Assembly: GCA_900088475.1 (NCBI GenBank)
Contig: FLMG01000261.1
Coordinates: 62,001-126,000 of the forward strand
Direction: 5' to 3'
Length of the DNA stretch: 64,000 bases
From: Hyphochytrium catenoides
Taxonomy: Eukaryota > Protista > Hyphochytriomycota
Shown in pieces: positions 1-61,484 of the stretch (its first letter is position 1; every line of letters starts with the position of its first letter). A program made the translations under genes and the position numbers. The notes under the pieces were generated by a model. The model saw only the letters and a program-made list of their open reading frames with translations, was not told the origin of the DNA and ran no database searches.

Positions 1-571
1 TCATCGCCTGTGCCGTTTCAGTGCGCACGGTGAAGGCCTTTGGCACTCAGCCAGGGGATAACCCCGCTGGTGAGTACAACTTTTAGGGATAACCGTCGGC
101 TACCAAAGGAAACCTTCACTAGTTGATGAAGCTTTCAATAATGTGGAAGCAATCATTCTCCGTTAGCTTCCTTCTGTATCGCACGGCCGATTGAATTATT
201 CTCAATCCTAGTTTTCACCGAAAGCTTTGTGTTAAACTATTCTCAATAGTATCTCTCATTCTCACCAGAGGTTGCCAATAAAGCAGACATTATCTCCAAT
301 AGGTAAGCCTCGTTAAGCCTGGTACCTTATCACACTGTAGTAGTACATGTACTGTACAGTTGTAGTGCTGATTGCTTCTGATCCATTTTTGAGCAGCATT
401 CATTTCGGTAGCTTCTGATCATTTTCGGAGCTCGTTGGATCCGAGTCGCTCTGCATATAAGACATAAGAGAACAATCTCTCAGATCTCACTTTATCTTCT
501 CTCTGAGATCAGCTGATCGAGCTGGACAGCACCTTCAATCTTCATCAGCGCCGAAGAGGACAAGTGAGTGA
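1..571 (+). CDS. Probable 3' exons of an upstream unknown gene (partial)
   Basis: Open frame IACAVSVRTVKAFGTQPGDNPA ends at a g|gtgagt donor (~70). A phase-compatible exon 269-302 (cag|...|gtaagc) reads EVANKADIISNR, and a possible last exon ends at TGA 569-571. No recognisable homology. Confidence 0.3.
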
Positions 572-756
572 GTTGTCCAGCCATAGAGAATCGTAGTCAA
601 AGGCAGGTCCCGAGGTTGATACGTACAGTACTTCGATGGAGTGAATAGGCTGTGTGTGTCTGACTGTAGCCTGGCGGATTTGGGATGTCTGTGGAGAAGG
701 ACGAAGCAGACGTACTCAAACGCCACTCCTAACGGAAGAGAGAGTTGGAAGGCACG

Positions 757-3700
757 ATGGCTTCTTCAATGCAGCAAAAAGCGCTGAAGCTGGCTAAGGT
801 GGCGATAGAAACGAAGGATTATGAAGAAGCGCTCAAACAATGCCAGTTGGTAGGGCATCCTATACACACGTTTGGGTGAAACATTAATGACATCCACATC
901 CAGGCCCTTCAGTTCGATGCCAGGAACTTTCATGGCCAGATTTTCAGGGGCGTGGCCAATCTACATTTACGAAAGGTAAAGCACGGACTCGCTATCTGTT
1001 CTATGCACGGCAATAAGATAGTCCTACACAGTTCGAAGATAGCGAAACAGCCTTTCGAATGGCGGCAGAGCTGCAACCGGATAGCCCGCTAGCATGGAAG
1101 GTATGTTACTCTGGAGTCGTCACCGTGATTTCTGCTAGAATCCTCTTGCCCTCATTCGCTCTGACCAAACCAGGGTCTATACGAGTTGGCTACTGCGTCA
1201 GAGAATCTGCAGCTGCAGGTAGAGGCAGCTCTGCGAATGGCTAAGATAACAGCAAGGTACCTACCAGCCATAGGGCACATAGAAAGGGTGCGCATCGAGT
1301 ATGCTTTTGGCGCTAAGTGGGGTTGATCAGCAAGGGCAATCTAAGCAAGTCCCAGACGTTCCGGGTGGCTCTTGCTCAGATATATGCAAGGCTTAACAAA
1401 AGGGAGGAGGTAAATTTGACCGACCCTATCTTTTTATTCTGGTCCCAACAACATGATGGACTGTCTCTCAATGTAGGCCCTTGAGGTATGGGAGGACGTT
1501 CTAAAGACGGGCCTAGAACATCTCCAACAAGATGACGCCGAAATCAGTGAACTGCAGATTCGCATTGAGATTAGCACTCTATTGGTATGGCCGTATGCTG
1601 CATCACGGTTAGTTTCCATCCTCAAACCTGTCGAAATTGTCGCACCTTTTCCAGTTGGAAACTCGACAGGACGAGTCCGAGGCCTTCTGCTCAGCTTTTG
1701 AGGCTTTAGTCGAAAGTGCTTCAACTTCTCCTTCATGCTCCCCTTCACCTGAGTCGCAGCCAAGAGTTGAAAAGTTAGTGAACCATTACATAGCCCTGAA
1801 GCTAGCAGCGGCAGAGAAGGCGTCCAAGAAGAGAGATAAAGTCGCCCACATGCTTCAGCTTCATAGTGTTTCTAGAAATATCACCAAATGGCAGTTTCAG
1901 CTCCAGCTGCCGCTGGAGATGGTTCTATCATCCTATGAGGACGACGGTACCGGTAATCACCCTCAGCTTTTACCTTCAACGCTACTTGCTCCCCCATTAG
2001 GCACTCTTTCGTATTCATACGGACAATCGTCATGATGCTAAGGGCTACCTCGATATAAATCACTGCCAATGGGTGTGACTTTTTGCGCATAGATGTCACA
2101 GACGAAGAGGCATTGACGTTGGCTCAAAGGTTGATAGAAAACTTTCCCTGCTCTCCTTTGGGCAAAATATACAAAGCCAGGGACTTGTTCAACAGTGGGG
2201 ATTTGGCGGAGGTAGGTGAACCTGGATGAATATTAAGGGGTGGTATGAGGCTAGAGGGAGTGTATCGTTTCATCTCCGGACTCTTTCATGTCTCGCTCTT
2301 GAAGATTTTCTCATGCTTGTTCTTTTTTATCAGACCAACAAGTTACTGGCAGGAGCTCTAAGAGCTAATAGTTCCATCGCGCTTGGTTGGATAACCATAG
2401 CCCAGCTGCACCTCCTTGCTGGGACCGAAGTGTTTGACCCGGCGGGAGCAATTCGCTATTTGACCAAGGCAGACGAAGTGCTAAGTGAGAGGGAAAAGAA
2501 GTACGGTCTACCTCCGCGGTCAGCTAGGTAAAGCCAGTGGGCTTTGGCCACCGAAACTGCTCACCTTACTTGTAACATTTCGTCCTCGTGATGGCCTTCT
2601 TAAATCCCTCTGTCTGAGGTTTATTTGGGTGTCTATCTTTTATCCTATCGTAGGGGAACACGAGAGCACATTATTTCGTGTAAAGGAGAAGCATACATGC
2701 TCCTGGAAAAGTATGACGAGGCTCGGAGGGAGTATGCAAAGCTCCTTTCAACAAGACAGAACGAGGCGGCAATTCAAGCTATCTGCGCTTCTTACGTCAA
2801 AGAGTCAAATGTCGACGGAGCCAAGGAGTTCCTTCTGGAGTGCAGGTTCGGAACCGTACAAGTCTGCATGAAATTGTGCAGTTAATGAACTTCTCCTGCC
2901 CCATTTTGACACCTAGAGAAAAGGAGCCTGCTTCGATTTATGTAAGAGCAAAGCTCGGCTGGGTAGAAATAGAAAGAGGAGATTATTCGGCCGCTGTGGA
3001 GTATTTACAGGACACAATCACGTCCAGGCCAGAAGTGGCTGAGTATCACTTTCTCCTTGGCAAGGCTTACTGGCTTCGCGGCGGAGAGAAGCGTCAACGA
3101 AAAGAATACTGCTTTTCCAGCCTTTTGTCTGCCGCTAAGCTTGATCCTTACATGGCGGATACGTATGCCCTCTTGGGGTGTTGGTACCGAGAGGTGCAGA
3201 AGGATGAGACAAGGGCAAGTAAATGCCTGATGAAGGCCTTGTCTATAGATCCCACTTGCGAAGTGGCCGGGAAAGCACAATTTCAATATTTAAGGCATCA
3301 AAAACAAGATGTGTTGGCAATGACTCTGCTGGAGAGAGCGATCGGTGCCGGCAAGAAGGCGCTATGGGCATGGAGTTTATTGGGCCAAATGCAGCTCTCT
3401 CAACGTCAATATACAGCTTCAGTTCTGAGCTTTCAAAATGCTCTAAGGGGAGACCCTAGCGATTCTGTATCATGGGGAGGCCTAGGAATAGCATACGCCC
3501 TCCTAGGAAAGCATCTCGCATCGCACAAGGCCCTAAGGAGGTAAGGAAAGGCTAGATAATGGGAAAGAGAAAAACTCGAAACCAAGGTTCAACTGGTATC
3601 TAGCGTCCACCTTAATCAACATCTCCTTCATAGACTGGAACTCCACTGCACGTAGTTCTTGCTGACTCTCGGTACGTCTTTTTAGATCCGTGGACCTGAG

Positions 3701-13947: not shown

Positions 13948-16900
13948 ATGGGTACGGGGCCTATCCTCATATTATCGCCATCAGTGGGATGGCTGTTGCT
14001 GCTTCTTATCGGCTTGANNNNNNNNNNNNNNNNNNNNNNNNNNNNNNNNNNNNNNNNNNNNNNNNNNNNNNNNNNNATCTGCAAAGTACTGACTTCACCT
14101 CTTGTTCTTATAGTGGTTTCTGGGAGTTCCGCAGATCCGACTTGTCCCATTGATGTGCCTTTGCCTCCGACCTGGGGCTTGGTCGCTCCTCTCTCCTCCG
14201 GTTCCGTCTTCGTGGAGTTTGAAACACCCCCAAACACCCAGGCGGAGGGCAACCAGGGCTCTCCCATCACTGGCTTCAAGATCGATGTCACGTCGAGAGT
14301 ACCTTCTCAACAGCTCCTGAAGATATCCTCCCTTGCGGGACCGCTCGTCGCGGGATCTTTCCAAATAAGCTTCCGTAATCAAGAGACCAGGTGCCTCGCC
14401 TATAACGCATCTGCCTGGGAGATTGAGGTAGCTTTGGAGGAGCTCGAAGCTATCGATGATGTAACAGTCACTACGGTCAGTCGTGGTCTCAATGACCTAA
14501 GTTATGCTATCACCTTTGATGGGCCCAACCTAGTCAACGGTGACCAACCTCTTGCGACTGCACTAGTCTGTTCACCCTTTTTACCCACTGGAGCAGAAGG
14601 ACGAGTGGATGTCTCACCCTTAACGACAGGTATTCCGGGTTTTGTCCCTCAAGTAGTGACGTTGGAGACTGTCTCTGCACTAGGTGAGCCTCTAGATGGG
14701 TCGATGGTACTTTCCATTGACTTTCGGGGCCATTTAGTCCAATCTACCGGCATCACTGCAACCATCATGGCCGGCTCCTCCATCGCTATTACATCAGCCT
14801 CCTTAGTGGGTAAAGTAAATAGAGGGGACAGGGTCAGAATTGGGGATCATGACTTCACGGTTCATGCAACCAATCCATTTACTGCTACACAGCTCCCGCT
14901 TGACACATATCATCCCAATGGTGTGGTGACTGCGCTAGTCAATGTAGAAGATTCTGTTTTGGGTAACGTGGCCGTCACAGCGGCTTCATCAACGGTGCAG
15001 ACAGCAGGCGATTGGAGGTCAAAGGTAAAGGTGAATGAGTACTTGAGCATCGGTGGCCATGAAGTGAAGGTGGTCGCTATTGACGCCACGAGTCTCACTT
15101 TAGCAAGTCCTTGGGCACATGGATCAACGAATCGTATCACGGCCTATGCCCGAAAGGCTGTCACAGTACCTTATGATGTCTCAGAACATGCTTTAGCTGC
15201 TGCTCTTTCCACCCTACCGGGAGCGGGTCAGGTGCAAGTATCACGGTTTGGACCCTCGCGTCTGGGCTCGTATGCGTACACGTTAACCTTTCTTTCGCGA
15301 ACAGCTTCCTATCGGTGTCCGTTATCACCGTGCCTGAAGGCTTCCCTCATTGGCAGCACCTGTTCAGGATGCGATACGAAGGTCACTGTAGTGCAAGAAG
15401 TTCTTCTTCCCTCCTTCGCTGAAGGCATGTATATCACGACAGAGATTGAGGGAGGTATTCCAGAGATTCAAAGAGTATCCCTGTTCTATTCTGTTCAAGA
15501 AGTAGTAGCTGGAGGGAGCTTTGACGTAGAGTTTGGTCCACCCACGTCTCCAACTCAGAGGGTCACTGTCCCATGGAAGTCTGATGCGCAAGACTTGAGA
15601 ACATTACTCATGAGGCTACCAGCTATTGGGCGGTTGGAGGTCAGCAACGTCAACGACAGCCAATTCGGGATCCGGCAGTGGGATGTGACATTCACATCTC
15701 TTCACGAGGATGTCCCTCTACTACGGGTGGATGGCTCTGGGCTTCCCGCTGGATCAACTATCAAAGTTCGAGAGCTAACGAAGGGCCGCCCCACCCCTGC
15801 GCAGACTGTAATAGGAGGACTCAAAGCTGGAGTGGAGTATGCAGTGAGAGTGTCATCAGTTAATCAAAATGGCCGAGGGCCAAGTACTGAGAGCATGCAA
15901 AGTTTGGGCTCTGGTCTTCAACCATTCATCTTCAGGACAGCCGAAGCTCCAGAGGCGCCAACGCTGGAGTCGATTGTGCCAGTGTCGGAGTCTGAGGTGA
16001 TGTTAAAGTACCAGCCTCCTATCCGGGACGGCGGAAACGCCATTACGAAATATAAAATTGAGTGGACTGCGGGAGACTCCTTGTCGCCTTTTGGCTCTCC
16101 TGAAGTTCAAGCGGTTACATTGTTTTCGAATCAGGAGAATGATACTGCTGGTACTTTCCGGCTCCGATTCGGAGGCGCATTTACTCAACGTCTTCCATTT
16201 GATGGGTCAGCGGCCGCCATTACCGAGGCCCTTTCCCTACTTAGTTCAAATCCACAGAAAGTTGAAAGCTCCAGACGTCCAGTTGTGGCGTCATATCTTT
16301 TGGCGCCGACGGTGACAACTTCCTCTTTAAGCGTTCCAGCACTATCTGAATGGCAATCATCCATACTGACTTCATCCACTGTCGTCCGGACTGGCGATTG
16401 TATGTTTAGAATCGTAACTGCATCCAAGACTGGTGATACCAGTTTGATGGGTACCAGGATTGGCCCAGCGTGTACTCCTTCCTTAAACCTTATTGTGGAG
16501 AGTGCTCACAACTCTGACTTTAGTGGTTTAGGTTATGAATGGCAAGTAACCTTCTCCCACAAGCTGGCTGGAAGCCCATTGCTGGGCGCTGATGTGGAAA
16601 ATGTTCGCTCTGTATCGGGCCTGTCAACAGTGGCACATTCCGTCGTCAGACTGAAACCTCCAACCACACCGCCCGGCTACGAATACTTTACTCAGACTGC
16701 CGAAGTTGAAAAGTGTGACTCCTACCTCTTAGGACCCTCAGCTCACCGACAACGTATAGTCCTGACGTCTCAGGGGACCGTCACGGCTGGTGAATATCGC
16801 ATAGCAGTGGGCTCTGCAATTACAGACTGCATCCCTTACAATGCTGCCGCTGCAGATGTGGAACAGGAGCTACGCACACTAGCTGATTTTCAGTCATTTG

Positions 16901-19900: not shown

Positions 19901-22900
19901 GAGGTCCAGGTGGTTTACACTACAAGCGAATCCCCGATAGGAGGTACCTTCCGTTTATCACTGGCGGGAGAAATGACAGGTCCTCTCGGTGTTTTGGCCT
20001 CCGCTTTGGAGGTCAAGAGAGCTCTGGAACTACTGAAGTTCACAAATACCGTCTACGTAACGAGGGAGATCACAGACACTAGTAACAAACTTTGTTTGTG
20101 GAGGATTACCTTTGCCAATGCTATGGGTAGCCTTGCCGGTTCCGGAAGGCTGGCTCCTCTAGTGGTAGCGACTTCGTCGTTGACTGGTAATCAAGCTGCG
20201 ATACGCGTTAGTGATATGGTGTATGGCAGTTCACCTCGTACTTTGATGATAAAGCAGCTGATAGCTGGGCGGCCTTATTATTGCAAGGTGTCCGCCTTTA
20301 ACTCTGAAGGCTTTGGTGAACCATCATCGGTAGTGTCTGCTGTGCCTATTTCTCAGCCAAGTTCGCCCGCAGCAGTAGCCCTCTCCGTTACCTCTGCAAC
20401 TTCTCTTACGGTCAACTGGGCACCCCCGTCTATGGATGGTGGGCTTCCTGTTCAGGAGTACAGGGTGGAATGGTACACAGGGACATTTCTTAACGAGCAG
20501 CAAACGATCACTATAGGTGCTGATGCTTCGTTGCACGAGGTCCAAGCTGTTCGCTCCGCCGCCGATCGCCCAGGGCTGCAGGGTTATTTCACGTTATCTT
20601 TCAAAGGAGAAACTACGGACAGGATCTCTTGGAACGCTCCTGCTGTTGGAACCGGGTCGGTGCAAGCTGCCCTACACAAGCTTTCAACCGTCGGAACCGT
20701 TGCGGTGCAACGGTCTGTCTCGGCCAAGCTAATATCCAATTTCCTCGTAGGGGTTGCCCAAGGATCTGATTCTGTGAGCTTGGAGTCGTCACCAGGGACA
20801 CAGACGCTGGGTGATGTGCTTCAGCCCAACGACTTGATTTGGATCAGTGACAAACAGTTCGAAGTAGCCTCAATAGGTCCTGGTGGTCTAGCAGTGACAG
20901 TGGTCCCGGCCTACGACCTTGATACTCCATCTTCGCCCCAGTTGATATATAAAGAAGCATATGGGTATTCGTGGACGATAACCTTCTTGCGAGGTCACGT
21001 CGGAGACCAGCCTTTGATGGTTGCAGCTCCAGCGGATAACTGGGCTGGGGTCAACCCCACTCTGGACGTCATCGGTCTGCAGGACGGCGCAAACGCTCTT
21101 TATGGTTTCTATTCGCTTAAAATGGACACAGCCGACGCTAGCGAACGTACTCCACTAGTACCTTGGAATGCCTCTTCAGATGACGTGAGGCTCGCGGTGA
21201 GCGCTCTCTCCGCTGTCTCCGACCTAAATGTTACCAGGAACATCAATGGCCAAGGCTATGATTGGCATTTAACCTTTACACAAGAAGTTGTGGATGACTT
21301 GAAAGTCTTATCTTCTGATACACAACTTCTCAGTGGTCCGAGTGCCAGAGTCCTTGTTTCAAGAACAGTTCCAGGGACAATGCCTTCTAACTACGGAATT
21401 GCCAGTGTTCCACGAAGTGCAGGGTCTACCTCTTACACTATCACAAATCTGACACCAGGTCTCAGCTATTTTGTAAAGGTGTCTGCCGTTAGTTCAGCAG
21501 GAAAGAGCAAGCCAGCGATCCCGAATCCTCCCTTTGCGGTTCCGCGTACAGTGCCCCAGCCTCCAGCTGACGTATTAGCTCTCGCTCTGTCCAATAGAGC
21601 TCTAAAGGTGTCGTGGAACTATCCCGCTAGCGATGGCGGAAGTAGGGTCCAAAGGTACCTTGTGCAATGGGACTCGCATGACGACTTTCGAAATGCCAGA
21701 CGAGGTTCTCAGTCGGCGGCGGTTCTCGAAAGCGTCTTTCCTCCTGGACAAAGGAGGTTTCTGAACATTCCGGTGCCCTATGAGTCTGTTATGTTCATCC
21801 GAGTAACTGCGGTGAATGACCTGGGCCCATCCCCGCCCCAACTTGCAACTCCAAAGCCCGTACGAGCCCGACAGCAGCTCCCTGGGTCTCCGCTCAATGT
21901 TAAAGTACAGCCAACTTCTGCAGCTAGCCTGCTTGTCTCATGGGACCCCCCTAGTTCGGACTTGCCGTTTTATGGCGGAGATGGGTAAGGATACATTGCT
22001 GCATTGGCCCCTGCTTCTTTGTACATTGTCTACATGACTCAATGACTATCCTTCTTCCACAGGGGTTCAGACATCTTGAAGTACGTCATCGAGGTCGATG
22101 ACTTTCCTGACTTTACAAACAACGTACAGCGATTCACAATTGAAGCATCAACCAACAACGTATTTCCGGTTGGCAGAAGAGATCCTATGACTGGTGTCCA
22201 AAGCTCGATATTGGATCCCACTAAGACCTACTACGTCAGGTAAATAGAGTTTAGAAGGGCCTTGAACTTCCTATTTGTCCGATTCTAAAATGTCCTCTTC
22301 CCTAACGTCATTGTAGAGTCTCAGCCGTGACTAGTGTTGGGGTTGGCACTCCTGGATATACCGCCAGTGGAGTCGCCCCTGCTATTGGTCTGCCGTCCGC
22401 ACCACGAATGAGATCAGCACGTCCAGCATCGGTCCTTTCTGCCACTTCCATCCTGGCTGAATGGGATGTACCTGAGAGTGATGGCGGCCACTCTATCGAC
22501 GGCTTCAACGTCCAGTGGGATGTTGATGGTAGCTTCAATAGCAGCGGACTTGTTCAAGAAACATTTGTTCCAGCAGTAAAGGAGGCACAAACCGTCGCTA
22601 TCCTGGCAGATGCCGAAATACCTGAACAATGGATTACTCTCACCACTGCGGTAGTGAACGAAAGACAGACAGTGCGGACAACTGCGGTTGGAGTCGATGA
22701 GGTTCAGACTATCCAGACCGTGGGTCCTGCAGCTGTTGATGAGATCCAGACATTCACAACTAGCGCACCGGATGTTGATGAAATCCAGGAATTACGTATC
22801 TCTGCCCCACATCGTGCCGAGATTCAGCACATAAGGACTTCAGCCACCGAAGTCACAGAGGTGCAGACAATCCATTTGGCGGTTTTAGCCCAGCCAGAGG

Positions 22901-25900
22901 TTCAAGAAATCAAGGTATTCTATCCTTCTGCAGCCAACCGCGGGGCTATAGGAGGGACCTTTACTCTACGGCATAACACGCAGACTTGCGCTTTTTGTAC
23001 CTCGCGGCTGGATTCATCCGCACTGAATATAGATCCGTCGCTGCCTGGTTCTTTGCAAACGGAGCTGAACAACCTGCACGGTCCTTCAGCTGTAACTGTG
23101 GTAGAGACAGAAGTAGCTAGCGGGCCAGGCTGGGAACTGACGTACACGATAACCTTCAGCGGAAACGCCCTTTCTGGCGATGTGCCTCAGCTCGAGCTGG
23201 CCGCCAGCTCCACCTACACCACCGGAACCCCAACAATTGCGGCGGCATTCACCTTTGCAACGACTCAAGATGGCAACGAGCCTTCCGGCACATTTAAGTT
23301 GCGCAACCCTTGCGAAGCGTATTCGGATCCGACCGGAACTCCTCCATATCAGACTTCAGTGTGTGAGCCTCTAGTACTTTGCAGCAACTGTGTGCAAGCC
23401 TTCGATGGTAGTACCTTGACTCTGTCAATGGCCCTGGGTTCCATAAGTGAGGGGAGTCTGGTGATGGTCAATAATTGTCAGCNNNNNNNNNNNNNNNNNN
23501 NNNNNNNNNNNNNNNNNNNNNNNNNNNNNNNNNNNNNNNNNNNNNNNNNNNNNNNNNNNNGGGTAGTTGATTGGCCAATAGTGTCTGCCAGTCGCATTCA
23601 AAGCATGCTCGGGCAGCTTCTTAACCTTGACGGGGTCACTGTTACCAATCGAAACGTTCTGCGGAATTCGGATGGGTGGATTGGTCTGACAGCTGATGTT
23701 ACCTTTTTGCAGAGTCATGGAACACTACCTTTGCTTCAGTGCGACATGTCAACCGTCAGCTCTACCTCCAACGGAGCTCCTTGTACTTCCCCAAGCTGCA
23801 CATGCGACGTCGTAAGGACTAGAATTGGCAGCCTTCTTCAGGGTGATTTCAGCATTAGCATCGAGAGACAGTTTGGTCCCTTGACGTTTTCTGATCCCCT
23901 TACTTTCCCTTGGGATGTGGATAGCGCAAAACTCGCTTCTGTGTTGAGCAGCTATACAGCCTCTACCGCTCCATCTGAAAAACCTTTTGGAACCGTATCC
24001 GTAAGTCGACAGGCCTATATTCCCAGTGGGAACTCAAAATGGTCTGGAGGTTATCTGTGGGCTATTACGTTTCTAGATCGAGGTAAGTTCCGAGATAGCC
24101 TGTGGGAGACCGCTTGATCCTTACTCTCTGCATCGTAGGCTGGGACGTCCCCAAAATGGTTGTCAATGGAGCTAGTTTGAGCTGTACAGCAGCGGCATGC
24201 ACCTCAACTATAGCTGTAGAGGATATGACTTCCCCATTTGCGGTTGATCCTACCACCGCCTCTGTCGACGGTAATGAGATACGCGGATCCTTCTCTTTGA
24301 CATTTCGAGGACAGACAAGAGCATTCATGCTTGGTACGGATACAACGGCAGACCCTGAAACTGCCTACATCACATCCCTGGCAGATGGCAACTTTAAGAC
24401 TGCATTGACCGGCTTGGGAGGATTAGGACCTGGGAATATAGTCACTCGATCCGCTGCAGATTCTGCCAGAGGTTATACCTGGACCATCACCTTCTCGGAT
24501 TCTGCCAACGGCGGATTACTTCCGTTGCTTCAGATTGATTGTTCGGGTCTCACTGGGATAGGTGTTGCTTGCTCGGCGCTACAAACTCGGAAAGGGAACA
24601 CTCTTGCGGGATCCTTCACGCTTACGTTTGACGGCTACACAACACCAGCACTGAACGCTAAGTCCACTGAGCTCGAGGTCCAGGCGGCACTAAGTGCTCT
24701 TCCCTCCATTGCTCCGTCACGCGTGGCGGTAACACGATCTGCACCCTCAGAGGTCTCTGGCTTTACTTGGAGTGTTACTTTTACGTCCAGTAAATGGGTG
24801 AATCCGACAGTCGACCATTCAACCCTGCAACCTGGCAACTGGGTTGGCTCTGCCGCCAGCTGGTACGCGACGTGGCCATCGGGTTACTCAAAGGCTTGGG
24901 GAAAGAATGTAGGTAGTTTATGGGCCAATGCTAGACGATTGGGTTGCGACTCCAGTGGACTTACCGGTTCCAACACTATAAGTACAGCGATATCGTGTAC
25001 CGCAGATGTTGCGAGGGCAGGTGTTGGACCATTACTTGGAACTTTCCAGCTTAGCCTAGATACGACTGGACATCCTGTAATTGGCACGAAGGGAAGCTAC
25101 GCTACTGTCATGATTCCGCACAACGTTCATGCTTCAAGTACAGACAGTGGATCAGACGGCTCGTCGCTTCAGGAGATTCTTGAGGCTATGCCCAATGTAG
25201 GGAAGGTGGCGGTACGACGCAGTGCTGTTGACCCGGCGAACGGCGGCTACACGTGGACGGTGACATTCCTCTACGACAAAGAGGGCGTTTGCCAACAAAG
25301 AGACACCGCGACCAATCTATGTAATGCGCCCGGTGATGTCCCGGAGCTTCAGGTGACAGGAGCCTCTACCATCTTACCAAGTATATGCCCTGACCCAGCC
25401 CAGTGCATCAATGGCGTAGTTCTTCGAGGTACCTTCTCTACATTCAAGGTCAGCGGAGATCCAGACATTTTGAAGGGTTGCGAAGCTTGTGTAGTGACCT
25501 GTGAAAATGACGACTGTATTACAACCAACACTCTTGCCGTGTCGGGGTATGACGCCACTGTGGAACTGTCGCGATTTCTTTCTGGAGGTACACATATCTC
25601 TGTGGGAGGTGGGACACCATGCAACTTCGAAGTAGCTGAGGTCTCTTCAGCAGTCACCAACAGCCATATTCTGGTGAAAGCAGGGCATGGGTGCAGTACA
25701 GTTGGCGCTGGCGGGCCTCTGAGAATAGTACTACAGTGGAACGCAACACCGCGTCAAGTGCAGCAAGCTCTCGAATCTTCCTCTGACCTATCTAAGGAGA
25801 CAGGGTTATGGAAGGCGTCGGGACGTGTTGTAAATGTAACGAGGACTGTATTAGGCAAGTATGGCGATATGATATGGAACGTACGCTTTGTATCAAATCC

Positions 25901-28900
25901 TCAGATGACTCCACCTGGAGCGGGCGATGTCCCGCTTATCCTTGCCCAGACCACGGACTTTACTGCTTGCCCGGCATACATCTGCATCTCTGTTACGGAG
26001 ACGAAAAAGGGCTCCAGACCCCTGTCAGGAAACTTTAGGGTTGATTATGTCTCCCCAACAGGGCCCAGGATAATGGCTTACGACGAAGCAGCACAGCGGA
26101 TGAAAAGAAAGCTGGAGGAGATGGCAACTATTGGAACAGTAGACGTGGTTCGAAGCACATTTCCTACGTGTGCGCTGCCTTCTTGCTCCGGTGGTTGGGG
26201 TGACTTGCCGGTGTTGAAGGATGGCACCCGCGGAGGCTATGTCTGGAAAGTCAGATTCCTCAGCAACCCGGGATCTGTGGCCGGAAAAACCTTTCCTCCT
26301 GGAACCGGAAGAGTAGCACAGATACAGGTGGACGCCGCCGGAACATTATACGGCAATATTGCACAGATTTCGACGGTTCCTGTATTGCTTGGCTCAGTGC
26401 CACTTGGAGGAACCTTTACCATAGGGCTCGGTGAAAATCAAACAATTCCGTTACAATTCAACGCCCCTTACACTTCTTTAGAGCAGGCCCTAGAAGATTT
26501 ACCTTCAGTGGGAGATGTAAGTACGAGAAACGATCACATCTAGCCCACTATCAATAGCTCAACCGCTGACCTCCATACTTTCCCTTATATCACATATTTC
26601 TTTGTTCAGGTACAAGTTTCCAAAGCTCTTGCCTTTTATGAACCCATTCCGGGTGTGACAGCAGATGTTTCAAGAGATGCTGAGGGCCTTCAGGTGACAG
26701 GAGACTATCTCAAAAGTCTTGCACCCGGAGACGTCTTTCGTCTAGGCGGCCAATCCTGCAACTCAGGCTCTGCATGTGACCTACCTGGAGGCAATGGGGA
26801 AGTGTTACTTGGCCATGTGGGAATGGAGTCCAGCTCGCCCCTTGTAGATATGGATGGATATGTGGGATACCAAACTCAAATATCTCCTGGTGAAGAGCTT
26901 ACCATACAAGGCGACACCTATGGCGTTCGGAAGACAGGTGTCCATGTACAAACGCTTACTGTGGAGATGGATACTTCCGTGGTGTTAGATAACAGCGGCT
27001 TCTTCAGAATCTCCCTTACACACAACCATCAAACCAGCGACACCGGTTGCTTTCCTCCTGATGTCACTGCATCTGACATGGCGGCTGGCCTTAACAGCTT
27101 GCCAAATATCGTGGGTTCTATAACGGGTACTGACATAGTCGTGTCCCGCTCCAGCCTTCAGCAATTTAGTCCAACCAGCAGTGGATATGTCTTCTCTATT
27201 TATTTTGAAGGGGCGTCAGTGCAGGGTAAAGTTCGTCTACTGGAGGTTTGCAGCACTAGTACTTGCTGTCCCAGTCAACATAGTTCGTACTTCGGCGGCG
27301 TTGACGTCATTGTAGACGAGGTTATCACCGGTGGGAGAACCGAAGTTCAGACCATTAGCTTGGCTACCGATGCAGGGTTCGTTGAAGATACCAGCGGCTA
27401 TTATAGGTTATCCCTAGGGAGCGCTGGACCATCTTCTTGTATCCGCTGGGGGGCAGATCCAAACGAAATTGAGGACGCTGTTGCGGCCCTCTTAAGCGCC
27501 CCAGGTAAGACGATTGCCTCCGCAGGCAACTAGACATTGGCTCATGCATCACTTTCTGCCTTTAGAGAATTTGCCAGGCAGAGATGTAATGGTCAAGAGA
27601 CAAGGCTATGGTAAGTCGATCCAAGAGGTCCAACGATTGTCCGTCTTAGCCACCAGTGCTGTAACCAAGCATCCGAGCATTGGGCTCTTCAGACTACGGT
27701 GGGTCAACGGTGGCCTGACCTTCGATACCTCAAACTGCATTCCCTTCGGTGCTTCAGCATCGATAGTGGAAAATGAACTCAGTGCTATGCTTGGCTCGCA
27801 AGACATTCACGTGACACGTGAGGGCGATGGCTCTCCTTCTTCAGGATACGGCTACGAGTATTATGTAACATTCTCTGGTCCTGTGGGAGGCGGAACCTCC
27901 ACAGTTCTGGGTGACGTCCATCCGCTGGAGTTCATTGATGTAGGTACCCATGGATGTCAACCGCTGTCAACAGGTTCGCCAGTCCTCTCCATTAAAACTG
28001 TTAGGGAGGGCAAGCCAAGCTACCTCTATAAAGTGTATTTCACTGGGCTGCTCCACGGTGATCTACCTCAACTTGCACTCACAACGGGGGGATGCTCTGG
28101 CTGGACCCACGTAGGAGGCGCTAGTCGTTCTGCCGTCACTGACACCTTACAGGATGGCGGCAGTGCTCATATCCAAGAGATAATTGTCAAGATGACGCTT
28201 GAGGTCGATCCCATTGTGGCTTCCTACCGCTTGGCCTTTAACGGCGAACAAACGGCTTGCCTCTCTTGGGATGCATCCGCAGCAGACATTGCGTCCGAGC
28301 TCACACAGCTATCTTCTATCGGAGCGAATGGGGTTACGGTGACTAGGTCGAGAGATTATAATCGGGCCGTACATGGCTATGTCTACTCGGTTTCTTTCGT
28401 AGGCGAAGATCTGTCCGGTAAAATTGCTTTACGTTTCGTGCTTTGCATATCTCTAACCTTCATATAGGTAGTATCCCTGACATACAATTGGGTGGCACCT
28501 CCTGCCCGTCGCCGCTTGATAGTTCATCTTCTGTGAACATTCAGACTGTCAGAGATGGAATCAATCCAATCAGTGAGCTCCTCTTAAGCAGGAGGTACCA
28601 AGGAGAGCAGGCGGCTTCTGTTCCTTTGTAAGTTACCCTGCTGTCGTTTCTGTGAGGAGAAATGATGGTCACCCTCACGAAATGACAGGTACAAGTTTGC
28701 GCCAGTCTTTACACTTCTCAGCGAGAAATTTGAGGTGCAGCGCCTTATTGTCAAGGACAGTGCGCCCATTACTGCCGGGGCAACATATGACTTAACTGGC
28801 TCTGGTACTGTCGTAGCTTGGAACACTTTAGAAGAAGATTTGGAAAAGATCATTGCGCTGGCCCGAAGTTACGAACCAGGTACCTTTTACTTGGCTTGGG

Positions 28901-31900
28901 CTAAGTCGTTGCTTCTGTCTCTAAACAATACTTGTTGATGTAGGCCAGATTGTGGTGTCTAGGAGAACTGATTCTACGTTAGCTCCTAACGGATACGTCT
29001 ACTCCATTTACTATGTGGGTGTGAACGGGGATGTTCCGGACCTATTGCCATCAATGCCCAGCGGTTTCACTGATCTCTCTCCCGTAAGTGCCCTAAGTCT
29101 TCGCCAGGGAGTAGCATCGACTGGACTGCTGTCTCGCCAGAACCAACTATTGCCCTTGGGATTAGCAAAAGATCCCACTGTTAAAGCGAATCAACGTCGC
29201 GCTGGATCAAACCTTAAGCTCTACAAGCCCAGAGGTACGTAAGCCAGGCACGTCTACTCGTTTTGGCTTGGTCTAATGAGGTGCTACTATCTAGGCTACT
29301 TGTACGTCGTGAAATTTGTCTCCAACCTCGGCGATGTAGCCCGTTTGACAGCGAATGCATCCTTGCTCCGGGGTTCGAACGCTAGTGCGTGGGTGACAGA
29401 TGATTATGTCAAGGGGAACCTACCATTCTCGGCGGTGATTGGCAGCTTAACTACGGGACTACGATATTTCATTCGAACAGCTGCTGTTACCGCCCTAGGA
29501 GTTGGACAATTTTCTTCTCCGGTGTCTGCGATTCCAGCTTCTGCACCCTTGGCACCTATGAGTTTAGAAGTCGGGGTTCCGAAGTATCAGGCGGAGATTC
29601 AAATGCTGAAAACAGCTGCTTCACACGTTCCTGAGGTCCAGGTTGTAAGAACGTCGGCCGATCCTATTGGTGCCGTCCAAGCGGTCCAAACGACTGCGGA
29701 AGGTTGTGGCGAGCGCGATTGTATCGACGGTAATATCGCCATTAGATGGCCGGAGATCCAAGTACTCACCGTCGAAGCCCCAGGTCAGTGCGAACCAATC
29801 CCCTACCAGAGCAATGTCATGTACCTAATCAGACTCTGCTCCAGCTCCTGTTCTCTCAGGCTCCTACCAGCTTGTCGTGGAGATCTTCAACATACCTGGA
29901 ATGCCATCAACGTCACAGACCACTGACCCTATTGCTTGGGACGCCTCAGCTTCCACTCTAGAGGCAGAACTCGCTCAGACTGCCGGTTTACCGCAAGGCG
30001 ACATCCATGTCATTCGGTCAGGTGATGGCGACGCAAGGTACGGCGTACAAATTTATGTTGATGGATCTAGTGCTAATCACTTTTGTATTTTAGCTCAAAC
30101 TATGGGTACTCATATACGATTCAATTCGTTGGTGCGTCTCTAACTGGCAATGTGCCAGAGCTGGCTGTTGCAAATCCCTCTTTCACGATTGTGGGTGGCT
30201 TAACCTCGCCGAACTACGTCACGGTGACAACAGTGAATGAGAATCAAGCTTTAGGGACAGATACAAGCATCCAAGAAGTACGTATATCATCACCCGATTC
30301 CCCTATTAGCCGGGGAGGTTATAGCCTGGCCTTTACCTTGGGAGGCGTTCCGCAAAGCACCCAATGTATTAATTTCGACGCCCCTGCTGACCGAGAAGGC
30401 TCTAATGGTGATGGAACCTCCGTTCAAGAAAGTCTTGAGGCGCTGCCTAATGTGGATCATGTAGTCGTCAAGAGAGAAAAGAATACGATGACGGCTCCAA
30501 ACGGCTTCATATATCGCATATTCTTCTCAGGCAATGGTGTGAGAGGGGCCGTCCCCCCTCTATTGGTGTCGATTTGTGCGCCCTTCGAAACCCTGGTATA
30601 CAACAACTACGTGTCAATCACCGACTATGTTGTTGATGTGATGGTACTTCAAGCAGGAGGCCTTAGCGCTGTCAACAGCTTGACAGCGCCAACTATCCAA
30701 ACAGCCGTGAACCTTCTTTCACCAATAGTAAAAGCACCTGCCGTTGTAAGCGAGTCCGCTAAGGACTTGCAGGGAGGAACCACTTGGACCATAGCTTTCG
30801 CCTCCACCGATGGAGCCGTTCCGGAAATGGTTTGTAGCACAGATAGTGCATTCAAGCTTGTTTCCTCTACGGCCGAGTGCGTTGTTGGAACCATCATTGG
30901 CGGCAATGAGATTGGTGGCGACTTCGTGATCGAATCAGTACCTGTAACGGCGTCAGCAACTGCAATGCAAATGAAGGATGCCTTAGAGAGTGTTTCGTGG
31001 ATTAGCAAGGTGGCTGTTTCTCGCACAGGACCAGATGGTCAGAAAGGTAGGCCGTTTGCGCATATTATTCTAAGAGATTGACCTTTAACCCAGTGCTAGG
31101 CTTCTCTTGGACCGTGACCTTTCTGGGTAATCGGGGGAAGGTCCCGTTGTTAAGAGCGGTCAACACCCTGACCGGGACCAATACTAAGGTGGATGTTGTA
31201 AGAAAAGTAGCAAATAACTTCGTTCAAGGCAGCTTCACGCTTTCCTACGGGGGTTACACGACATCTTCAATCGAACATGATGCTGAGCCAGATGCTTTCG
31301 CGTCGGAAAGCAGCGGCAAGAGTGTGCAAGAGGCCCTTCAGGCTTTGCCTTCAATAGGTTCGATCCTAGTCACCAGGTATGCAGTAAGGGTGCTACGTCA
31401 TTAATGTCAACCCAGGGCTAACGGATGTTGATTAGATCGGGACCGGACAGTGAAGGTGGCTATGAATGGCTAATAACCTTCAGAGATAGCAGAAAGAACG
31501 GAGGTGACCTGCCCCTTCTTGCCGTCAACGATGTCAACCTCAAAGGTGTTGGCGCTGGAGTGCTTGTGCAAGAGATTGTCAAGGGCTCCTTGCCAAACAG
31601 CCATGAGCTATGGCTGACCTTCAACTCTTCAAGCTCCCAAGGCAACCACGTCTTTTCCTACCAGACCGAATGGGATACTTCCACAGCCTTCTCAGGACCG
31701 AAGTATGATTCAGCAACTCTTAACCGGACGTCCGCCCTGAGGAAGTCGCTATCCGTCGTTACTTCCAGTTATTCTCTCGCTCCGCTTGAGAATGCAGCAG
31801 TGAGTGCCATGTGACCTCTTTCTTCGTCTGTCATATTATGTTTTGAACTGACCTCTACACATTATGCAGTTCCAATGGCCCGAGATCGTAAGAATTTACA

Positions 31901-34900
31901 CTCCTACAGGCGGCCCAGGCAGCTTCACTGTGACTTTTCTGGGTTACCCCAGTCACTCTATTGATCTGGGAGTCACGACGTACTCTAGTTTGGAATTATT
32001 TCTCAATGGCGTGTTCCCAGTCCAAACCTTTTTTGGCAACAGTGTTACGATCAGGCCAGAATCCCCGGCATCGACGCTTGTTGGAACTGATGCTTACTTT
32101 GACATCATCTTCAGTGGAATTCCAAGCATTTCTTCTCGAGTGGTGATTTCAGACCCGTCTTTGGCCACGATGTCAGTCCTGCAAACAGGCTCAACACTTT
32201 ATGGAAAACATCTTGCTGCCTTTACTTGTGTTGGGACAGGAGGGACAGTCCGATTCGACCTAGATGGTCTTCAAACAATTGAAGCACCATATGACACAGC
32301 TATCGATGATGTGTCTACATTGATAGTCAATGAGCTTGATCTTGATAGTAACGCCGTCATTTTCGCCGCCGATGATCCTAGCGCGACAGAAATCTGTGCA
32401 CCCACTGGTCCCCCTCCAAAGATCTTTATTCTGTTTAACTACTTGTATGGGCGTCTTAACCCCGTCATATCCGGAGCTGGGGGAGCATCAGTAAGTTTAC
32501 GCCATTTGTGCTATGTAACAGAGGCTCACCTGATGAATGTCCTTAGGTTACTCAGGATACATCATCTGGTGGGAGTGCCATAGATGGTATTATTTGGAGG
32601 CGCCCAACGATCTCGGGCACATTCTCCCTGGGATATGGAGACTTGACTACCCAGGAGCTCAATGCAGATGCCAGTGAGGAGGACGTTCGCTTTGCTATCG
32701 AGCAGCTGGTAAGAACATCATCATCACTTCTTTGTACCAGTTAGGTCCTAAGTAACCGGGTCTGTGTAGATGCCAGGAAACCTTACGGTGGCAGTAACTC
32801 GTGATTATTCCAAAATTCCTCTTGCTGGACGGGTCAGCGTGACGACGGGGTTGTCCTTTGTCCAATGCAGTGGAAGTGACTGTGACTTTGGTGGTGCTGC
32901 CTACGGCGTCCCAGGAGACCTGGTGCATATAGGCGGGACATGGTACACAGTGCTACCAGACACATCTTCTGGTGCTTTGCCCAAAGATCGGTTGTATCTT
33001 GGGGACCTCGACGGTGGCCCCACTATGTACTTAGGACCAACTGCTAGCAACGTCCAGGTCTATGGATGGGCTAAGGGGTACGAGTGGCACGTCACCTTCG
33101 TCCGATCTCCACCTCACATGTCTTTCGCCACTTTGAACCTGAGACCGGCTTTCTTGTTGCCCGTGGACGCAAAAGTGGCGATCCACCCACAAAACTGCTG
33201 GCGCTGTTACTTTATTCCATCGGGGAGCATGAGGGGTGAGAGTTTGGTGATGGGAACAACCTATTTCATTCGATTGTCTGCAACAAACGCTTTGGGCACA
33301 TCTCCCTTTAGTACGGCGACCGGTACACCCAATGGTATTCCTGAAGCCCCCACGGTTCGCTTGATTGTCAGAGGAGGATCAGGGGTTGATGTTATGATAT
33401 CACCCCCTTCTTATCAGAGCGATGTGGCATCATCTTCGATTAATGGTGATATCCAGCGTTACATCATCCAGTGGGACACCTCTTCGTCCTTCCAGCACGG
33501 CAATCCCTTGTGTGAGGATTGCGTTACTGACGTGGAAACGGACAGAATAAAGGTTAAAGCAGACCTTACTGCGTACCTCAACCCTGGTAATAAGATTTCG
33601 GTTGGGACATTTGGATGTCCGATGGAGGTTACGACAGTTTCAGCGACCACTGTGGAAGTGGTTCACCCGCATGGATGCACGCTACTTAGCGATCAGACGC
33701 TGCCTGTACTAATCTTTCGAATAGCTCCAGGCGTGCTACAGGGAGACTCAATCAAGGGTAAGTTCACCTCCTCGTCAATAGCAAAGAAACAAGAGTTATG
33801 GACCACCTTAAATCACTTACTTACCTTACATCACGTTCTGTTACCTTCTAGGCACTCCACCTTACCGCTTTTCGATAGCTGGGTTAGTGACGGGACAGAC
33901 GTATTTCGTACGAGTAGCTGCCAGAAACTCAATACCACCGGAAAGAATAGCGTTCGACGGCTACCCGTCAGACAATACACGCTGGAGTGGCCCTCATCAA
34001 GTCACGCCGCAGAATATCGCCCCATCAGCACCACGGTCGCTCGTGCTAACTGCGTACAGCCGGACAACTATCCAGCTGCAGTTCTATCCACCATTGTATG
34101 ACGGCGGCCTCCCAGTTAGCTCGTACAAAGTTGAAGTTGACGTCACTCCTCAGTTCGAGTCTAGCTACAGAACTACGGTTACCTTAGCCACAGCCTCGCT
34201 TAGCACTCTTTATGACCAAGGGCCTCTTGTGCACCTTCTGACGGGCCTAGAAACAGGCAAAGCATACTACATCCGAGTGGCGGCTATCAGCGGCGCCGGG
34301 ACTAGTCCATTTACTGAGGCAGCCAATGCTCTCTTACTAGTAGGTCTCGCAGAACCTCCACGTTCACTGGATATTGCCAACGGCCTAGACCAGCCAAACT
34401 CTGTGGCGGCTGCATGGTCACCCTCAGCTGGTACTGGCGGTGCACAGGTCCAGAGCTATTGGGTAAGAGCTCTCTTTTCTACTATAGGCTCCCTATTCTA
34501 ACCGTCAAGTTTTTCTGAATGCTAGATTGAGTGGTGGACGTTAGATTCCCAGGCTGAAATACAGACGGTCCAACTTGTGTGGACGGGGATCACGCCCAGC
34601 AGCTCTGACAAGTTCCGGCTGGCGTTTGGGGGCTACTTTTCAACCAATTTGCCCTATGACTCCTCAGCAGCTTCATTCCGGCGAGCGCTTATGAACCTCG
34701 GAGCTGCCAGCGGATTTTCTGTGCGACCTTCTGACCTATGGACGGTGTTCCTTAACCTATAGTTGACCATGGCTTTTCTTTATGCTTTTGTCTCCTATGT
34801 TTAGGCTGTCGTGGGGAACATCGACGTGGTTCGCAACGCTTTGCCGTCAGGAAAAGGATACGAATGGACTGTAACGTTCTTAGAGTCTGAGGGTCTCAAC

Positions 34901-60900: not shown

Positions 60901-61484
60901 AAAACAATCTAAAAATCCAGTTGAACAGGTAAAAGAGACCCTTATCACTTCCTCCCGTAGCCGCAACATATCTGTCCCCTATTATTTGGGTCCTTCACTG
61001 GGTTGCTTGGCTCGGTTTTCACAGGCTTCCTTTTTCTATGCTTCCACGCTTAGGTTTCCCTGTTCGCTCTCTATTCTCTCTTTGTATTCCCGGCTGGCTA
61101 TACAGGTTAGGTTTTTCAGCAAGAACTCCACCTTCGGGGACGGATGCTTTAAGTTGACTGAAGCTCAATACAAGGGGGTCTGTCCATCTTCGTGGATGGA
61201 GACCTCGATTAGGCTCTTTGTTAGGCAAAGGGACCATGTAGGTTGCCTCCAAACGCTGCATGACTGTCTCATCCGCTCTGCCTCTGTCTCTTGGANNNNN
61301 NNNNNNNNNNNNNNNNNNNNNNNNNNNNNNNNNNNNNNNNNNNNNNNNNNNNNNNAACTTCTCGTAACCGCTGTTCCACATGTCCACCACGTCACTGCCT
61401 CCCAAATAGTTTGGTATGGCACTCTCAGCCTTCGAGCGGTGGTGTTGCGAGGCAGACCTTCCTCCACCAACTTACAGCAGATGA
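57958..61484 (+). CDS. SAMHD1: SAMHD1-like HD-domain dNTP triphosphohydrolase lacking a SAM domain (~12 exons)
   Basis: Spliced MTELSID...SVRL|VKDIVHDK...IIDTPQ|[11 protein letters not shown]...[15 protein letters not shown]...|[17 protein letters not shown]...WKHEE|...[10 protein letters not shown]|[14 protein letters not shown]...[12 protein letters not shown]|...KRELYK...|NPVEQ|VRFFSK...[10 protein letters not shown]|[12 protein letters not shown]...*. The H...HD...D metal ligands are all present. Stop TGA 61482-61484. Confidence 0.92.
61296..61355. other. Assembly gap (60 N) in the last SAMHD1 intron
   Basis: Run of n between donor 61238 and acceptor 61409. Confidence 0.97.

What the first reader, a model, noticed from the sequence alone, without database searches (positions are those of the whole stretch)
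22576..29430. Russian-doll protein: nine lone 'EVQ' lead strands followed by nine strand-less domain bodies
Seen: elsewhere in the giant protein each repeat starts with a short E-V/I-Q-x-V/I strand followed at once by a body (GTF-x-L...helix AL-x-x-L...V-x-R...W-x-VTF...G-D-x-P-x-L). At 22576-22920 nine such ~12-aa strands occur back to back: VKEAQTV, IPEQWIT, VNERQTV, VDEVQTI, VDEIQTF, VDEIQEL, RAEIQHI, VTEVQTI, QPEVQEI (the second is the most degenerate). They are followed by nine bodies with no strand of their own, starting GGTFTL, SGTFKL, QGDFSI, RGSFSL, AGSFTL, LGTFQL, RGTFST, SGNFRV and GGTFTI. The ninth body is itself interrupted and closes at GYLYVVKFVSNLGDV (~29300). Inference: each domain is inserted inside the previous one (strand 9 with body 1, up to strand 1 with body 9). 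The chain would run out as a thin strand and return building domains around it, forming a closed, telescoped rod that may be mechanically clamped. I know of no described protein with nesting this deep, but could not search.
Basis: partly seen in the sequence, partly recalled or inferred. Interest (0 to 1): 0.88.

Follow-up and report, generated by a model that had tools for sequence, protein, structure and literature searches.

The report
Nine-deep nested domains in one FN3
One fibronectin-type domain of a giant secreted stramenopile protein carries nine copies of a small phage-like domain inserted one inside the next, each closed by a single lead strand; this is deeper than the six levels a 2026 survey gives as its deepest case.

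Summary
Nine 'E-V/I-Q' strands stand 13 residues apart at 22576-22920, followed by nine domain bodies without a first strand. The ninth body is split and closes at 29295-29353. The whole block sits inside one split FN3 domain (halves at 22390-22575 and 29375-29545). The assembly gap is bridged by a public contig with 150 letters, so it is continuous and in frame.

The nesting reading is supported by predicted structures, not solved ones:
- In an AlphaFold2 model of an ortholog with strands 2-9 and bodies 1-8, all strands are ordered.
- Single-domain PDB targets align to model ranges running from strand 9, 8, 7, 6, 5 to the end of body 1, 2, 3, 4, 5.
- In the window's own truncated construct, strands 9 and 8 are confident, strand 7 is intermediate, and strands 1-6 are disordered.
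- Strand and body counts stay coupled in relatives (2/2, 4/4, 9/9, about 13/13).

The domain is unnamed in Pfam but homologous (E 4.6e-32) to the repeat of mycobacteriophage Bxb1 tail-tip protein gp23, whose HMMER segment order and VIA-align chain spans indicate three-deep nesting in the solved chain; it also matches stramenopile mastigoneme proteins.

The mechanical-clamp idea is untested. The scan noted the same architecture before on another piece of this genome (s1-336106).

The parts
22390..22575 (+). N-terminal half of the host FN3 domain
   Evidence: Pfam fn3 profile positions 10-41, 16.3 bits, E 0.012; below the 25-bit cut-off alone, complementary to the C-half
22576..22920 (+). Array of nine lead strands (first beta-strand of nine nested domains), period about 13 residues
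   Evidence: E and Q of most strands invariant or at least 90% conserved in 30 homologs; same-index strands 46% identical between homologs against 29% for different index
22951..23274 (+). Body 1 (innermost; forms a contiguous domain with strand 9)
   Evidence: domain profile hit; window model residues 105-234 align to Bxb1 gp23 with Z 10.6, rmsd 2.0
23284..23829 (+). Body 2, with a small beta-barrel insert that holds the assembly gap
   Evidence: single-domain PDB targets align to window model ranges 91..416 to 92..420, that is strand 8 plus body 2
23483..23560 (.). Assembly gap: 78 N written, 150 letters in a bridging contig
   Evidence: joint 23482 to 23561, 150 letters between; orthologs have about 45-50 residues there
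23839..24281 (+). Body 3 (intron 24083-24138)
   Evidence: partner of strand 7 in the ortholog model (ranges 66..523, 67..523, 69..521)
24282..24599 (+). Body 4
   Evidence: ortholog model range 52..616, that is strand 6 plus body 4
24606..25028 (+). Body 5
   Evidence: ortholog model ranges 40..755 and 42..757, that is strand 5 plus body 5
25035..25424 (+). Body 6
   Evidence: pairing with strand 4 inferred, not seen in the listed alignments
25425..26012 (+). Body 7, with a second small beta-barrel insert
   Evidence: the insert in the ortholog model (residues 922-1008) matches beta-barrel domains; pairing with strand 3 inferred
26025..26393 (+). Body 8
   Evidence: pairing with strand 2 inferred
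26406..26636 (+). Body 9, first part: strand 2, helix and strand 3 (intron 26517-26609, GTAAGT...CAG)
   Evidence: profile positions 2-53; intron read from the DNA
26637..29233 (+). Insert within body 9: five further domains with their own lead strands (26943-27248; 27339-28080, itself interrupted by 27622-27933; 28168 to about 28420; 28729-29047)
   Evidence: the same layout is found in orthologs
29295..29353 (+). Body 9, closing part (strands 4-5, GYLYVVKF..GDV)
   Evidence: profile positions 59-85; conserved in orthologs, for example P0002 4926-4953
29375..29545 (+). C-terminal half of the host FN3 domain
   Evidence: Pfam fn3 profile positions 43-83, 14.2 bits, E 0.053

Best explanation
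The region encodes one FN3 domain whose C-C' region carries a ten-level recursive domain insertion: the FN3 host plus nine nested copies of a 95-110-residue alpha/beta domain. The domain has six strands and one helix: A (E-V-Q-x-V), B (G-x-F-x-L-x-F), helix, C (V-x-V-x-R), D (Y-x-W-x-V-T-F), E (G-D-x-P-x-L), F. Each copy is inserted in the A-B hairpin of the next outer copy. The chain therefore first lays down nine A strands, outermost to innermost. It then returns through nine bodies, innermost to outermost, and each body takes the A strand of its own level as its first strand. The two ends of the block meet again in the FN3 fold. Inferred, not shown: the nine domains form a hairpin-like side arm on the FN3 backbone of a roughly 7,300-residue secreted protein; folding must run inside-out, because only strand 9 plus body 1 is contiguous; the polar lead strands wait unfolded until their bodies are made; and the role is structural (a stiff extracellular projection), as for the same domain on phage virions and in flagellar hairs.
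For: Anatomy. Split FN3 with complementary halves; a two-level copy of the same design lies in one exon at about 20360-21560, with halves at E 6.8e-6 and 1.4e-7. AlphaFold2 on ortholog P0004 (strands 2-9 plus bodies 1-8, mean pLDDT 80.3): all eight lead strands are 8-10-residue DSSP strands with block pLDDT 72-91. AlphaFold2 on the window's own exon (strands 1-9 plus bodies 1-3, body 3 lacking its last two strands): strand 9 about 94, strand 8 84-95, strand 7 about 62, strands 1-6 46-58 and mostly coil. VIA-align ranges: compact 70-100-residue PDB domains align at rmsd 1.6-3.9 A to ortholog model spans 94..219, 79..423, 67..523, 52..616 and 40..757. The starts step back by about 13 residues per level and the ends fall on the ends of bodies 1-5. 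In the window model the spans are 105..234 and 91..416/420. Counts: nine strands and nine bodies in eight orthologs; 13 strands and 13-14 bodies in P0003; ten and ten in P0054 after one degenerate strand is admitted; 46 and 46 tokens in P0019; in this gene 2/2, 9/9 and 4/4. Homology: the domain profile hits Bxb1 gp23 (9d93) at E 4.6e-32. There E-V-Q opens each copy, and three first halves are followed by the last parts in reverse order. The gp23 chain spans of 239 and 344 residues, with only about 100 aligned, agree with nesting.
Against: No coordinates or contact map were available, so pairings are read from the first and last aligned residues of structural alignments, not from contacts. Levels 6-8 (strands 4, 3, 2) did not appear among the 50 rows shown, and level 9 (strand 1 with body 9) was not modelled. 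Both models are predictions from shallow alignments (23 and 30 rows; pTM 0.45 and 0.64). The two constructs are different proteins (33-45% identical), so the drop in strand confidence is not a same-sequence control. A monomer prediction cannot tell an intramolecular nest from a reciprocal swap between two chains. Some strand counts in relatives needed degenerate strands to be admitted after the fact. Nothing is known of expression, localisation or function.
Confidence: 0.8

Rival explanations
1. Intermolecular strand exchange: the nine lead strands (with the FN3 N-half) of one chain complete the nine bodies (with the FN3 C-half) of another chain. This would give swapped dimers or polymers, in the manner of donor-strand complementation in pili.
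For: The bodies lack their own first strand. The count rule holds equally for a swap. The family builds filaments elsewhere: mastigoneme proteins and phage tail parts.
Against: The innermost level is contiguous and the linkers are only 2-8 residues, which favours the hairpin closing on itself. The monomer models are confident with the intramolecular nest. In gp23 the segment order and chain spans point to nesting within one chain.
Confidence: 0.1
2. The nine strands form a structure of their own (a beta-meander or flexible polar linker) and the bodies are a variant that folds without a first strand.
For: The strands are short, regular and polar. In isolation a 13-residue period could give a meander.
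Against: With only three bodies present, strands 1-6 are low-confidence coil and do not pack on each other. With eight bodies all are ordered. Structural alignments place strands 5-9 in the domains of bodies 5-1. In the gp23 sequence of the solved entry, the profile match of each copy opens with E-V-Q. Strand number tracks body number.
Confidence: 0.05
3. Assembly or gene-model artefact: the strand array or the order of the pieces is produced by mis-assembly around the gap or by wrong splicing.
For: There is a gap inside the finding. My gene model is a rough Viterbi parse with at least two wrong introns.
Against: Strands 1-9 and bodies 1-3 lie in one open frame. A public contig bridges the gap in frame. 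The same order of parts is found in full-length proteins of Albugo, Aphanomyces, an MMETSP transcript and others.
Confidence: 0.02

Closest known systems
Mycobacteriophage Bxb1 tail tip cage protein gp23 (PDB 9d93); related single copies at the C-termini of the Bxb1 capsid and tail-tube proteins (9d9w, 9d9x, 9d94)
   Same: It is the same domain family: profile E 4.6e-32; Z 10.6-14.3, rmsd 1.6-2.0 A; the first strand is E-V-Q. It also appears nested: three first halves (270-324, 331-388, 391-467) are followed by last parts (513-544, 563-591) in reverse order.
   Different: It is a bacteriophage virion protein. The nest is three levels deep, not nine. The insertion site is between strands C and D, so half a domain precedes the insert, not a single strand. 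There is no FN3 host. I could not read the paper, so I do not know how its authors describe it.
Recursive domain insertion in the Si3 region of the cyanobacterial RNA polymerase beta' subunit (six levels; PMC13114784)
   Same: One domain type is inserted repeatedly into copies of itself, giving an A1-B1-C-B2-A2 layout. A survey of 2.7 million classified domains names it as its deepest example.
   Different: The fold is unrelated (sandwich-barrel hybrid motif). It is a cytoplasmic enzyme. It has six levels, against ten here (FN3 plus nine) and about 13-14 in relatives.
Flagellin, the flagellar cap FliD and hook-type proteins
   Same: They share the hairpin topology: the chain runs out through the N-terminal parts of successive domains and returns through their C-terminal parts. 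FliD D2-D3 aligns to strand 8 plus the inner domain plus body 2 (Z 5.2-5.8). Flagellin and FliD are the top Foldseek hits.
   Different: There is no sequence relation. They have two to four levels (my own knowledge, not tested here). Their inner levels are helical bundles that build a filament core.
Tubular mastigoneme proteins of stramenopiles (PDB 9ufe: 'Tubular mastigoneme protein', OCM5)
   Same: They carry one copy of the same domain (E 2.9e-6 and 1.6e-4) in extracellular structural proteins of the same eukaryotic group.
   Different: They are 366-368-residue chains with a single profile match and no nest in the matches listed. Nothing links the giant protein to flagellar hairs.
Donor-strand complementation in chaperone-usher pili
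   Same: A domain lacking one strand is completed by a strand encoded elsewhere.
   Different: There the strand comes from another subunit and drives polymerisation. Here the models put strand and body in one chain.

Membership tests
Recursive (nested) domain insertion architecture | The sequence of a host domain is interrupted by one or more complete domains | tested here: met
   Profile parse: nine first strands, nine bodies, body 9 in two parts, FN3 in two complementary halves
Recursive (nested) domain insertion architecture | The separated segments of each level form one compact domain in space | tested here: met
   Predicted models only. Single-domain PDB targets align to spans from strand (10-k) to the end of body k, for k = 1-5 in the ortholog and k = 1-2 in the window's protein. 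Levels 6-9 were not seen or not modelled.
Recursive (nested) domain insertion architecture | An inserted domain itself hosts a further insertion (depth above 1) | tested here: met
   Nine levels plus the FN3 host here; 2/2 and 4/4 clusters in the same gene; about 13 in P0003
Bxb1 gp23-type alpha/beta domain (no Pfam name) | Significant profile match over the domain | tested here: met
   hmmsearch with a 20-copy profile: 9d93 gp23 at E 4.6e-32 with three strong stretches. A single copy finds nothing. Pfam has no hit.
Bxb1 gp23-type alpha/beta domain (no Pfam name) | Same fold | tested here: met
   VIA-align Z 10.6 (window model) and 12.0-14.3 (ortholog model), rmsd 1.6-2.0 A over about 101 residues
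Fibronectin type III (host domain) | Pfam fn3 match above the gathering score | tested here: inconclusive
   N-half 16.3 bits (positions 10-41) and C-half 14.2 bits (positions 43-83). Each is below 25 bits, but they are complementary and sum to about 30 bits. The two-level cluster upstream passes with both halves (26.6 and 32 bits).
Donor-strand complementation (chaperone-usher type) | The missing strand is supplied by another polypeptide | not testable with these tools
   Monomer predictions place strand and body in one chain. An intermolecular swap cannot be excluded by computation here.
Flagellin / FliD family | Sequence homology and helical D0/D1 core | tested here: not met
   No Pfam flagellin or FliD match. 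There are only weak fold matches to the outer domains (Z 5-6). The likeness is in topology only.

The most novel reading that the evidence does not exclude
This is the deepest recursive domain nest yet seen in any protein: ten levels here and about 13-14 in relatives. It is conserved across stramenopile homologs (Albugo, Aphanomyces and others). It is built so that each level is closed by a single position-specific 'address' strand. That would force an ordered inside-out folding of a hairpin rod some tens of nanometres long, in which strands made first must wait for up to about 2,100 further residues.
Probability: 0.6. Interest if true: 0.8.

Novelty: new variant of a known kind. Interest (0 to 1): 0.74.

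Why it matters
Domain insertion is usually one level deep. A 2026 survey of 2.7 million domains gives six levels as its deepest example (PMC13114784). Here a natural protein appears to reach ten levels, and its relatives more, with only one eight-residue strand contributed ahead of each insert. If the predicted topology is real, it offers three things. It is a model for ordered, long-range, inside-out folding in the secretory pathway. It shows a domain whose termini and three permissive loops make it unusually insertable. It gives a design principle for stiff, branch-like protein rods whose two ends emerge at the same point. It also links an unnamed domain of actinophage virions with stramenopile extracellular and flagellar-hair proteins.

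Tried and rejected
- Pfam scan of all large exons found only fn3 and nothing for the repeat.
- phmmer of one domain copy against PDB sequences gave only noise; the profile was needed.
- PHROGs gave only weak tail-sheath and major-tail hits at E about 1e-4.
- Foldseek on the 1200-residue model gave poor TM scores, useful only as a hint of hairpin topology.
- I looked for model coordinates to compute contacts; none are exposed. I used pLDDT and DSSP contrasts and alignment spans instead.
- The Bxb1 structure paper (PMC12124961) is not held. The paper behind the 9ufe mastigoneme entry was not found.
- Literature searches for nested or 'Russian doll' domains in diatoms or oomycetes found no description of this protein.
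- My Viterbi gene model is approximate. The intron it placed at 26508-26543 is wrong; the true one is 26517-26609. Its 502-base intron after 34462 probably hides two small exons that carry domain hits.
- Early idea rejected: that the stretch before each G-x-F is a surrogate first strand. Contiguous tandem copies show both the F strand and the A strand in a row.
- A formal shuffle test of the parenthesis-like token strings was not run.
Full report
**What is there.** The window carries a giant plus-strand gene running from about 13873 to 37643. My rough model has 23 exons and about 7,300 residues. The introns are short GT-AG introns. They stand 12-14 residues apart. Seven of the nine score 17-26 bits on a strand matrix built from 264 family instances. 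The first (KEAQTV) and the second (PEQWIT) are degenerate. In an alignment of 30 homologs, the E and the Q of most of the nine strands are invariant or at least 90% conserved. This is not a chance pattern.

**The assembly gap.**
- The run of 78 N at 23483-23560 is flanked on both sides by frame-1 coding sequence.
- A 2301-letter Logan contig of a DNA run of the same organism lies on 23100-23482 and 23561-23950, with 150 letters between them.
- That is 50 codons instead of the 26 written, so the frame is kept.
- Orthologs have about 45-50 residues at this place.
- The gap falls in a small beta-barrel insert of body 2.
- The run may be the data the assembly was made from, so this shows continuity, not independent replication.

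**The domain.** An iterated profile built on the gene's own repeats gives an 87-position consensus and 43 hits along the gene. Pfam has no model for it; only fn3 is recognised. The full unit reads: A (E-V-Q-x-V), B (G-x-F-x-L-x-F), a helix, C (V-x-V-x-R), D (Y-x-W-x-V-T-F), E (G-D-x-P-x-L-x-V), 'L-T-G', and F (x-V-x-V-x-E-x-x-K-G). Where two contiguous copies follow each other (19550 exon), F of the first and A of the second stand in a row. So the stretch before each G-x-F of the nine bodies is the F strand of the previous body, not a surrogate A strand. This reading rests on sequence comparison and on DSSP strands at those places in the model.

**The parse.** In order along the chain:
- FN3 N-half (fn3 profile positions 10-41).
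- Nine A strands.
- Bodies 1-8, of which bodies 2 and 7 carry beta-barrel inserts.
- Body 9 up to its strand C (intron 26517-26609).
- Five further domains, each with its own A strand. One of them is itself interrupted by another.
- The D-E part of body 9 at 29295-29353.
- FN3 C-half (profile positions 43-83).

That makes 14 A strands and 14 bodies, balanced like parentheses, inside one FN3. The same gene holds two more such clusters. One has two strands and two bodies inside a split FN3, in a single exon at about 20360-21560; both its FN3 halves pass the Pfam cut-off. The other has four strands and four bodies at 29585-31800, with one self-contained domain in between.

**Relatives.** An exhaustive HMMER search with the strands plus body 1 found 103 proteins. 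They include full-length ones of 6,600-7,600 residues with the array at the same position. Named members are from Albugo laibachii ('similar to titin') and Aphanomyces astaci; others come from MMETSP and metagenomes. One ortholog starts with a hydrophobic, signal-peptide-like stretch, read by eye, and I saw no obvious C-terminal hydrophobic anchor. I therefore read the protein as probably secreted. The counts are:
- Eight orthologs keep nine strands, nine bodies and the same inserts.
- P0003 has 13 strands followed by 13-14 bodies.
- P0054 has ten and ten once a degenerate strand (TTQSLRIY) is admitted.
- P0019 has 46 strand tokens and 46 body tokens.

Strands of the same index are 46% identical between homologs, against 29% for different indices, so each strand keeps features of its own.

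**Structure predictions.** I used both available jobs.
- *Job 1, ortholog P0004:2713-3912.* It holds strands 2-9 and bodies 1-8, with a 23-row alignment that includes the window's exons. Mean pLDDT is 80.3. All eight lead strands are 8-10-residue DSSP strands with block pLDDT 72-91, joined by linkers of 2-8 residues.
- *Job 2, the window's own exon 22576-24084.* It holds strands 1-9 and bodies 1-3, body 3 lacking its last two strands, with a 30-row alignment. Mean pLDDT is 74.8. Strand 9 scores about 94, strand 8 scores 84-95, strand 7 about 62 with a short strand, and strands 1-6 score 46-58 and are mostly coil.

So a strand is ordered only when the body predicted as its partner by the anti-diagonal rule is present. 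The strands do not pack on each other when left alone.

**Pairings.** Coordinates are not exposed, so I read pairings from structural alignments of compact PDB domains.
- *Ortholog model.* The spans are 94..219 and 86..218 (strand 9 plus body 1); 79..423 and 80..423 (strand 8 plus body 2; gp23 Z 14.3, rmsd 1.6 A, 101 residues); 66..523, 67..523 and 69..521 (strand 7 plus body 3; Z up to 12.0); 52..616 (strand 6 plus body 4); 40..755 and 42..757 (strand 5 plus body 5; Z 9.3-9.4).
- *Targets.* They are contiguous stretches or compact domains of about 70-120 residues, so the first and last aligned model residues must lie in one compact domain.
- *Register.* The starts step back by about 13 residues per level and fall on strands 9, 8, 7, 6, 5. 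The ends fall on the ends of bodies 1-5.
- *Window model.* The same holds for levels 1 and 2: 105..234, and 91..416 to 92..420. FliD D2-D3 aligns to 89..419.
- *Not covered.* Levels 6-8 did not appear in the rows shown, and level 9 was not modelled.

**Homology to solved structures.** A profile of 20 copies hits the Bxb1 'tail tip cage' protein gp23 (9d93) at E 4.6e-32, a 'Tubular mastigoneme protein' and OCM5 (9ufe) at 2.9e-6 and 1.6e-4, and the Bxb1 major capsid protein at 4.9e-4. In gp23 the E-V-Q motif opens each copy. Three first halves (270-324, 331-388, 391-467) are followed by last parts (513-544, 563-591). The structural alignments span chain ranges 328..566 and 266..609 with only about 100 residues aligned. 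From this I infer that the same family is nested three deep in a solved chain, but with the insertion between strands C and D, the site also used in body 9 here. That E-V-Q opens each copy in the gp23 sequence argues that the lead strand is an integral first strand of the fold and not an accessory.

**What is known.** A 2026 survey of 2.7 million classified domains reports six-level nests in cyanobacterial RNA polymerase as its most complex case (PMC13114784). Flagellin and FliD share the out-and-back topology. I found no description of this protein or of a nest this deep. The Bxb1 paper was not readable and no paper for the 9ufe entry turned up. The scan had already noted the same architecture on another piece of this genome (s1-336106). 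Its follow-up reached the same reading. That is not independent evidence.

**Mechanism.**
- *Shown by sequence:* the order of the parts, the balanced counts, the split FN3 and the homology.
- *Shown only in predictions:* each lead strand completes the body of its level.
- *Inferred:* (a) With linkers of 2-8 residues on the outward leg and F directly followed by B on the return leg, the nine domains must abut in a row, forming a hairpin-like arm whose two ends meet in the FN3. At roughly 13 residues per level on a nearly extended leg, my estimate of its length is a few tens of nanometres. (b) Folding must go inside-out. (c) The arm is a side branch and would not lie in the line of tension of the FN3 chain until the FN3 opens. 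(d) The role is structural.

**Rivals.** A reciprocal swap between two chains cannot be excluded by monomer predictions (about 0.1). A self-standing strand sheet is disfavoured by job 2 and by the alignment spans (about 0.05). An artefact is disfavoured by the bridging contig and by colinear orthologs (about 0.02).

Noticed in passing
window 20360-21560: A clean two-level copy of the same design lies in a single exon with no gap. The FN3 N-half is followed by two lead strands (NEQQTITIG, HEVQAVRSA), two bodies (the first with a beta-barrel insert) and the FN3 C-half. Both FN3 halves pass the Pfam cut-off. It is the best small construct for an experimental test.
   Followed up: partly
window 29585-31800: A second cluster has four lead strands (the third is weak: AVQAVQ), four strand-less bodies (one degenerate) and one self-contained domain in between. 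Orthologs show four strands.
   Followed up: partly
window 23310-23600 and about 25450-25700: Bodies 2 and 7 carry an inserted small beta-barrel between strand B and the helix. In the ortholog model these inserts (residues 250-330 and 922-1008) resemble phage tail and tailspike barrels, the riboflavin synthase barrel and the Uba1 FCCH domain (Z 6-9.6). Together with the A-B and C-D sites, the domain thus tolerates insertions at three places.
   Followed up: partly
PDB 9d93, 9d94, 9d9w, 9d9x and 9ufe against the window's domain: The same unnamed domain decorates the capsid, tail tube and tail tip of an actinobacteriophage. It also occurs in stramenopile flagellar-hair proteins and in giant oomycete/diatom-type extracellular proteins. 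This is an odd distribution and may point to transfer between a phage or bacterium and a eukaryote.
   Followed up: no
window 34463-34964: My gene model skips 502 bases here. The frame-2 stretches 34526-34759 and 34805-34921 carry good hits to the domain profile, so two small exons are probably missing from the model.
   Followed up: no
window 14018-14076 and 61296-61355: There are two more assembly gaps in the window. The first lies near the 5' end of the giant gene, so its start is uncertain.
   Followed up: no
P0019 (7591 aa, JGI/IMG metagenome protein): This relative has a run of 13 lead strands and further runs nested within the returning bodies, with 46 strand and 46 body tokens in all. 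Its nest may be more complex than the one in the window.
   Followed up: no
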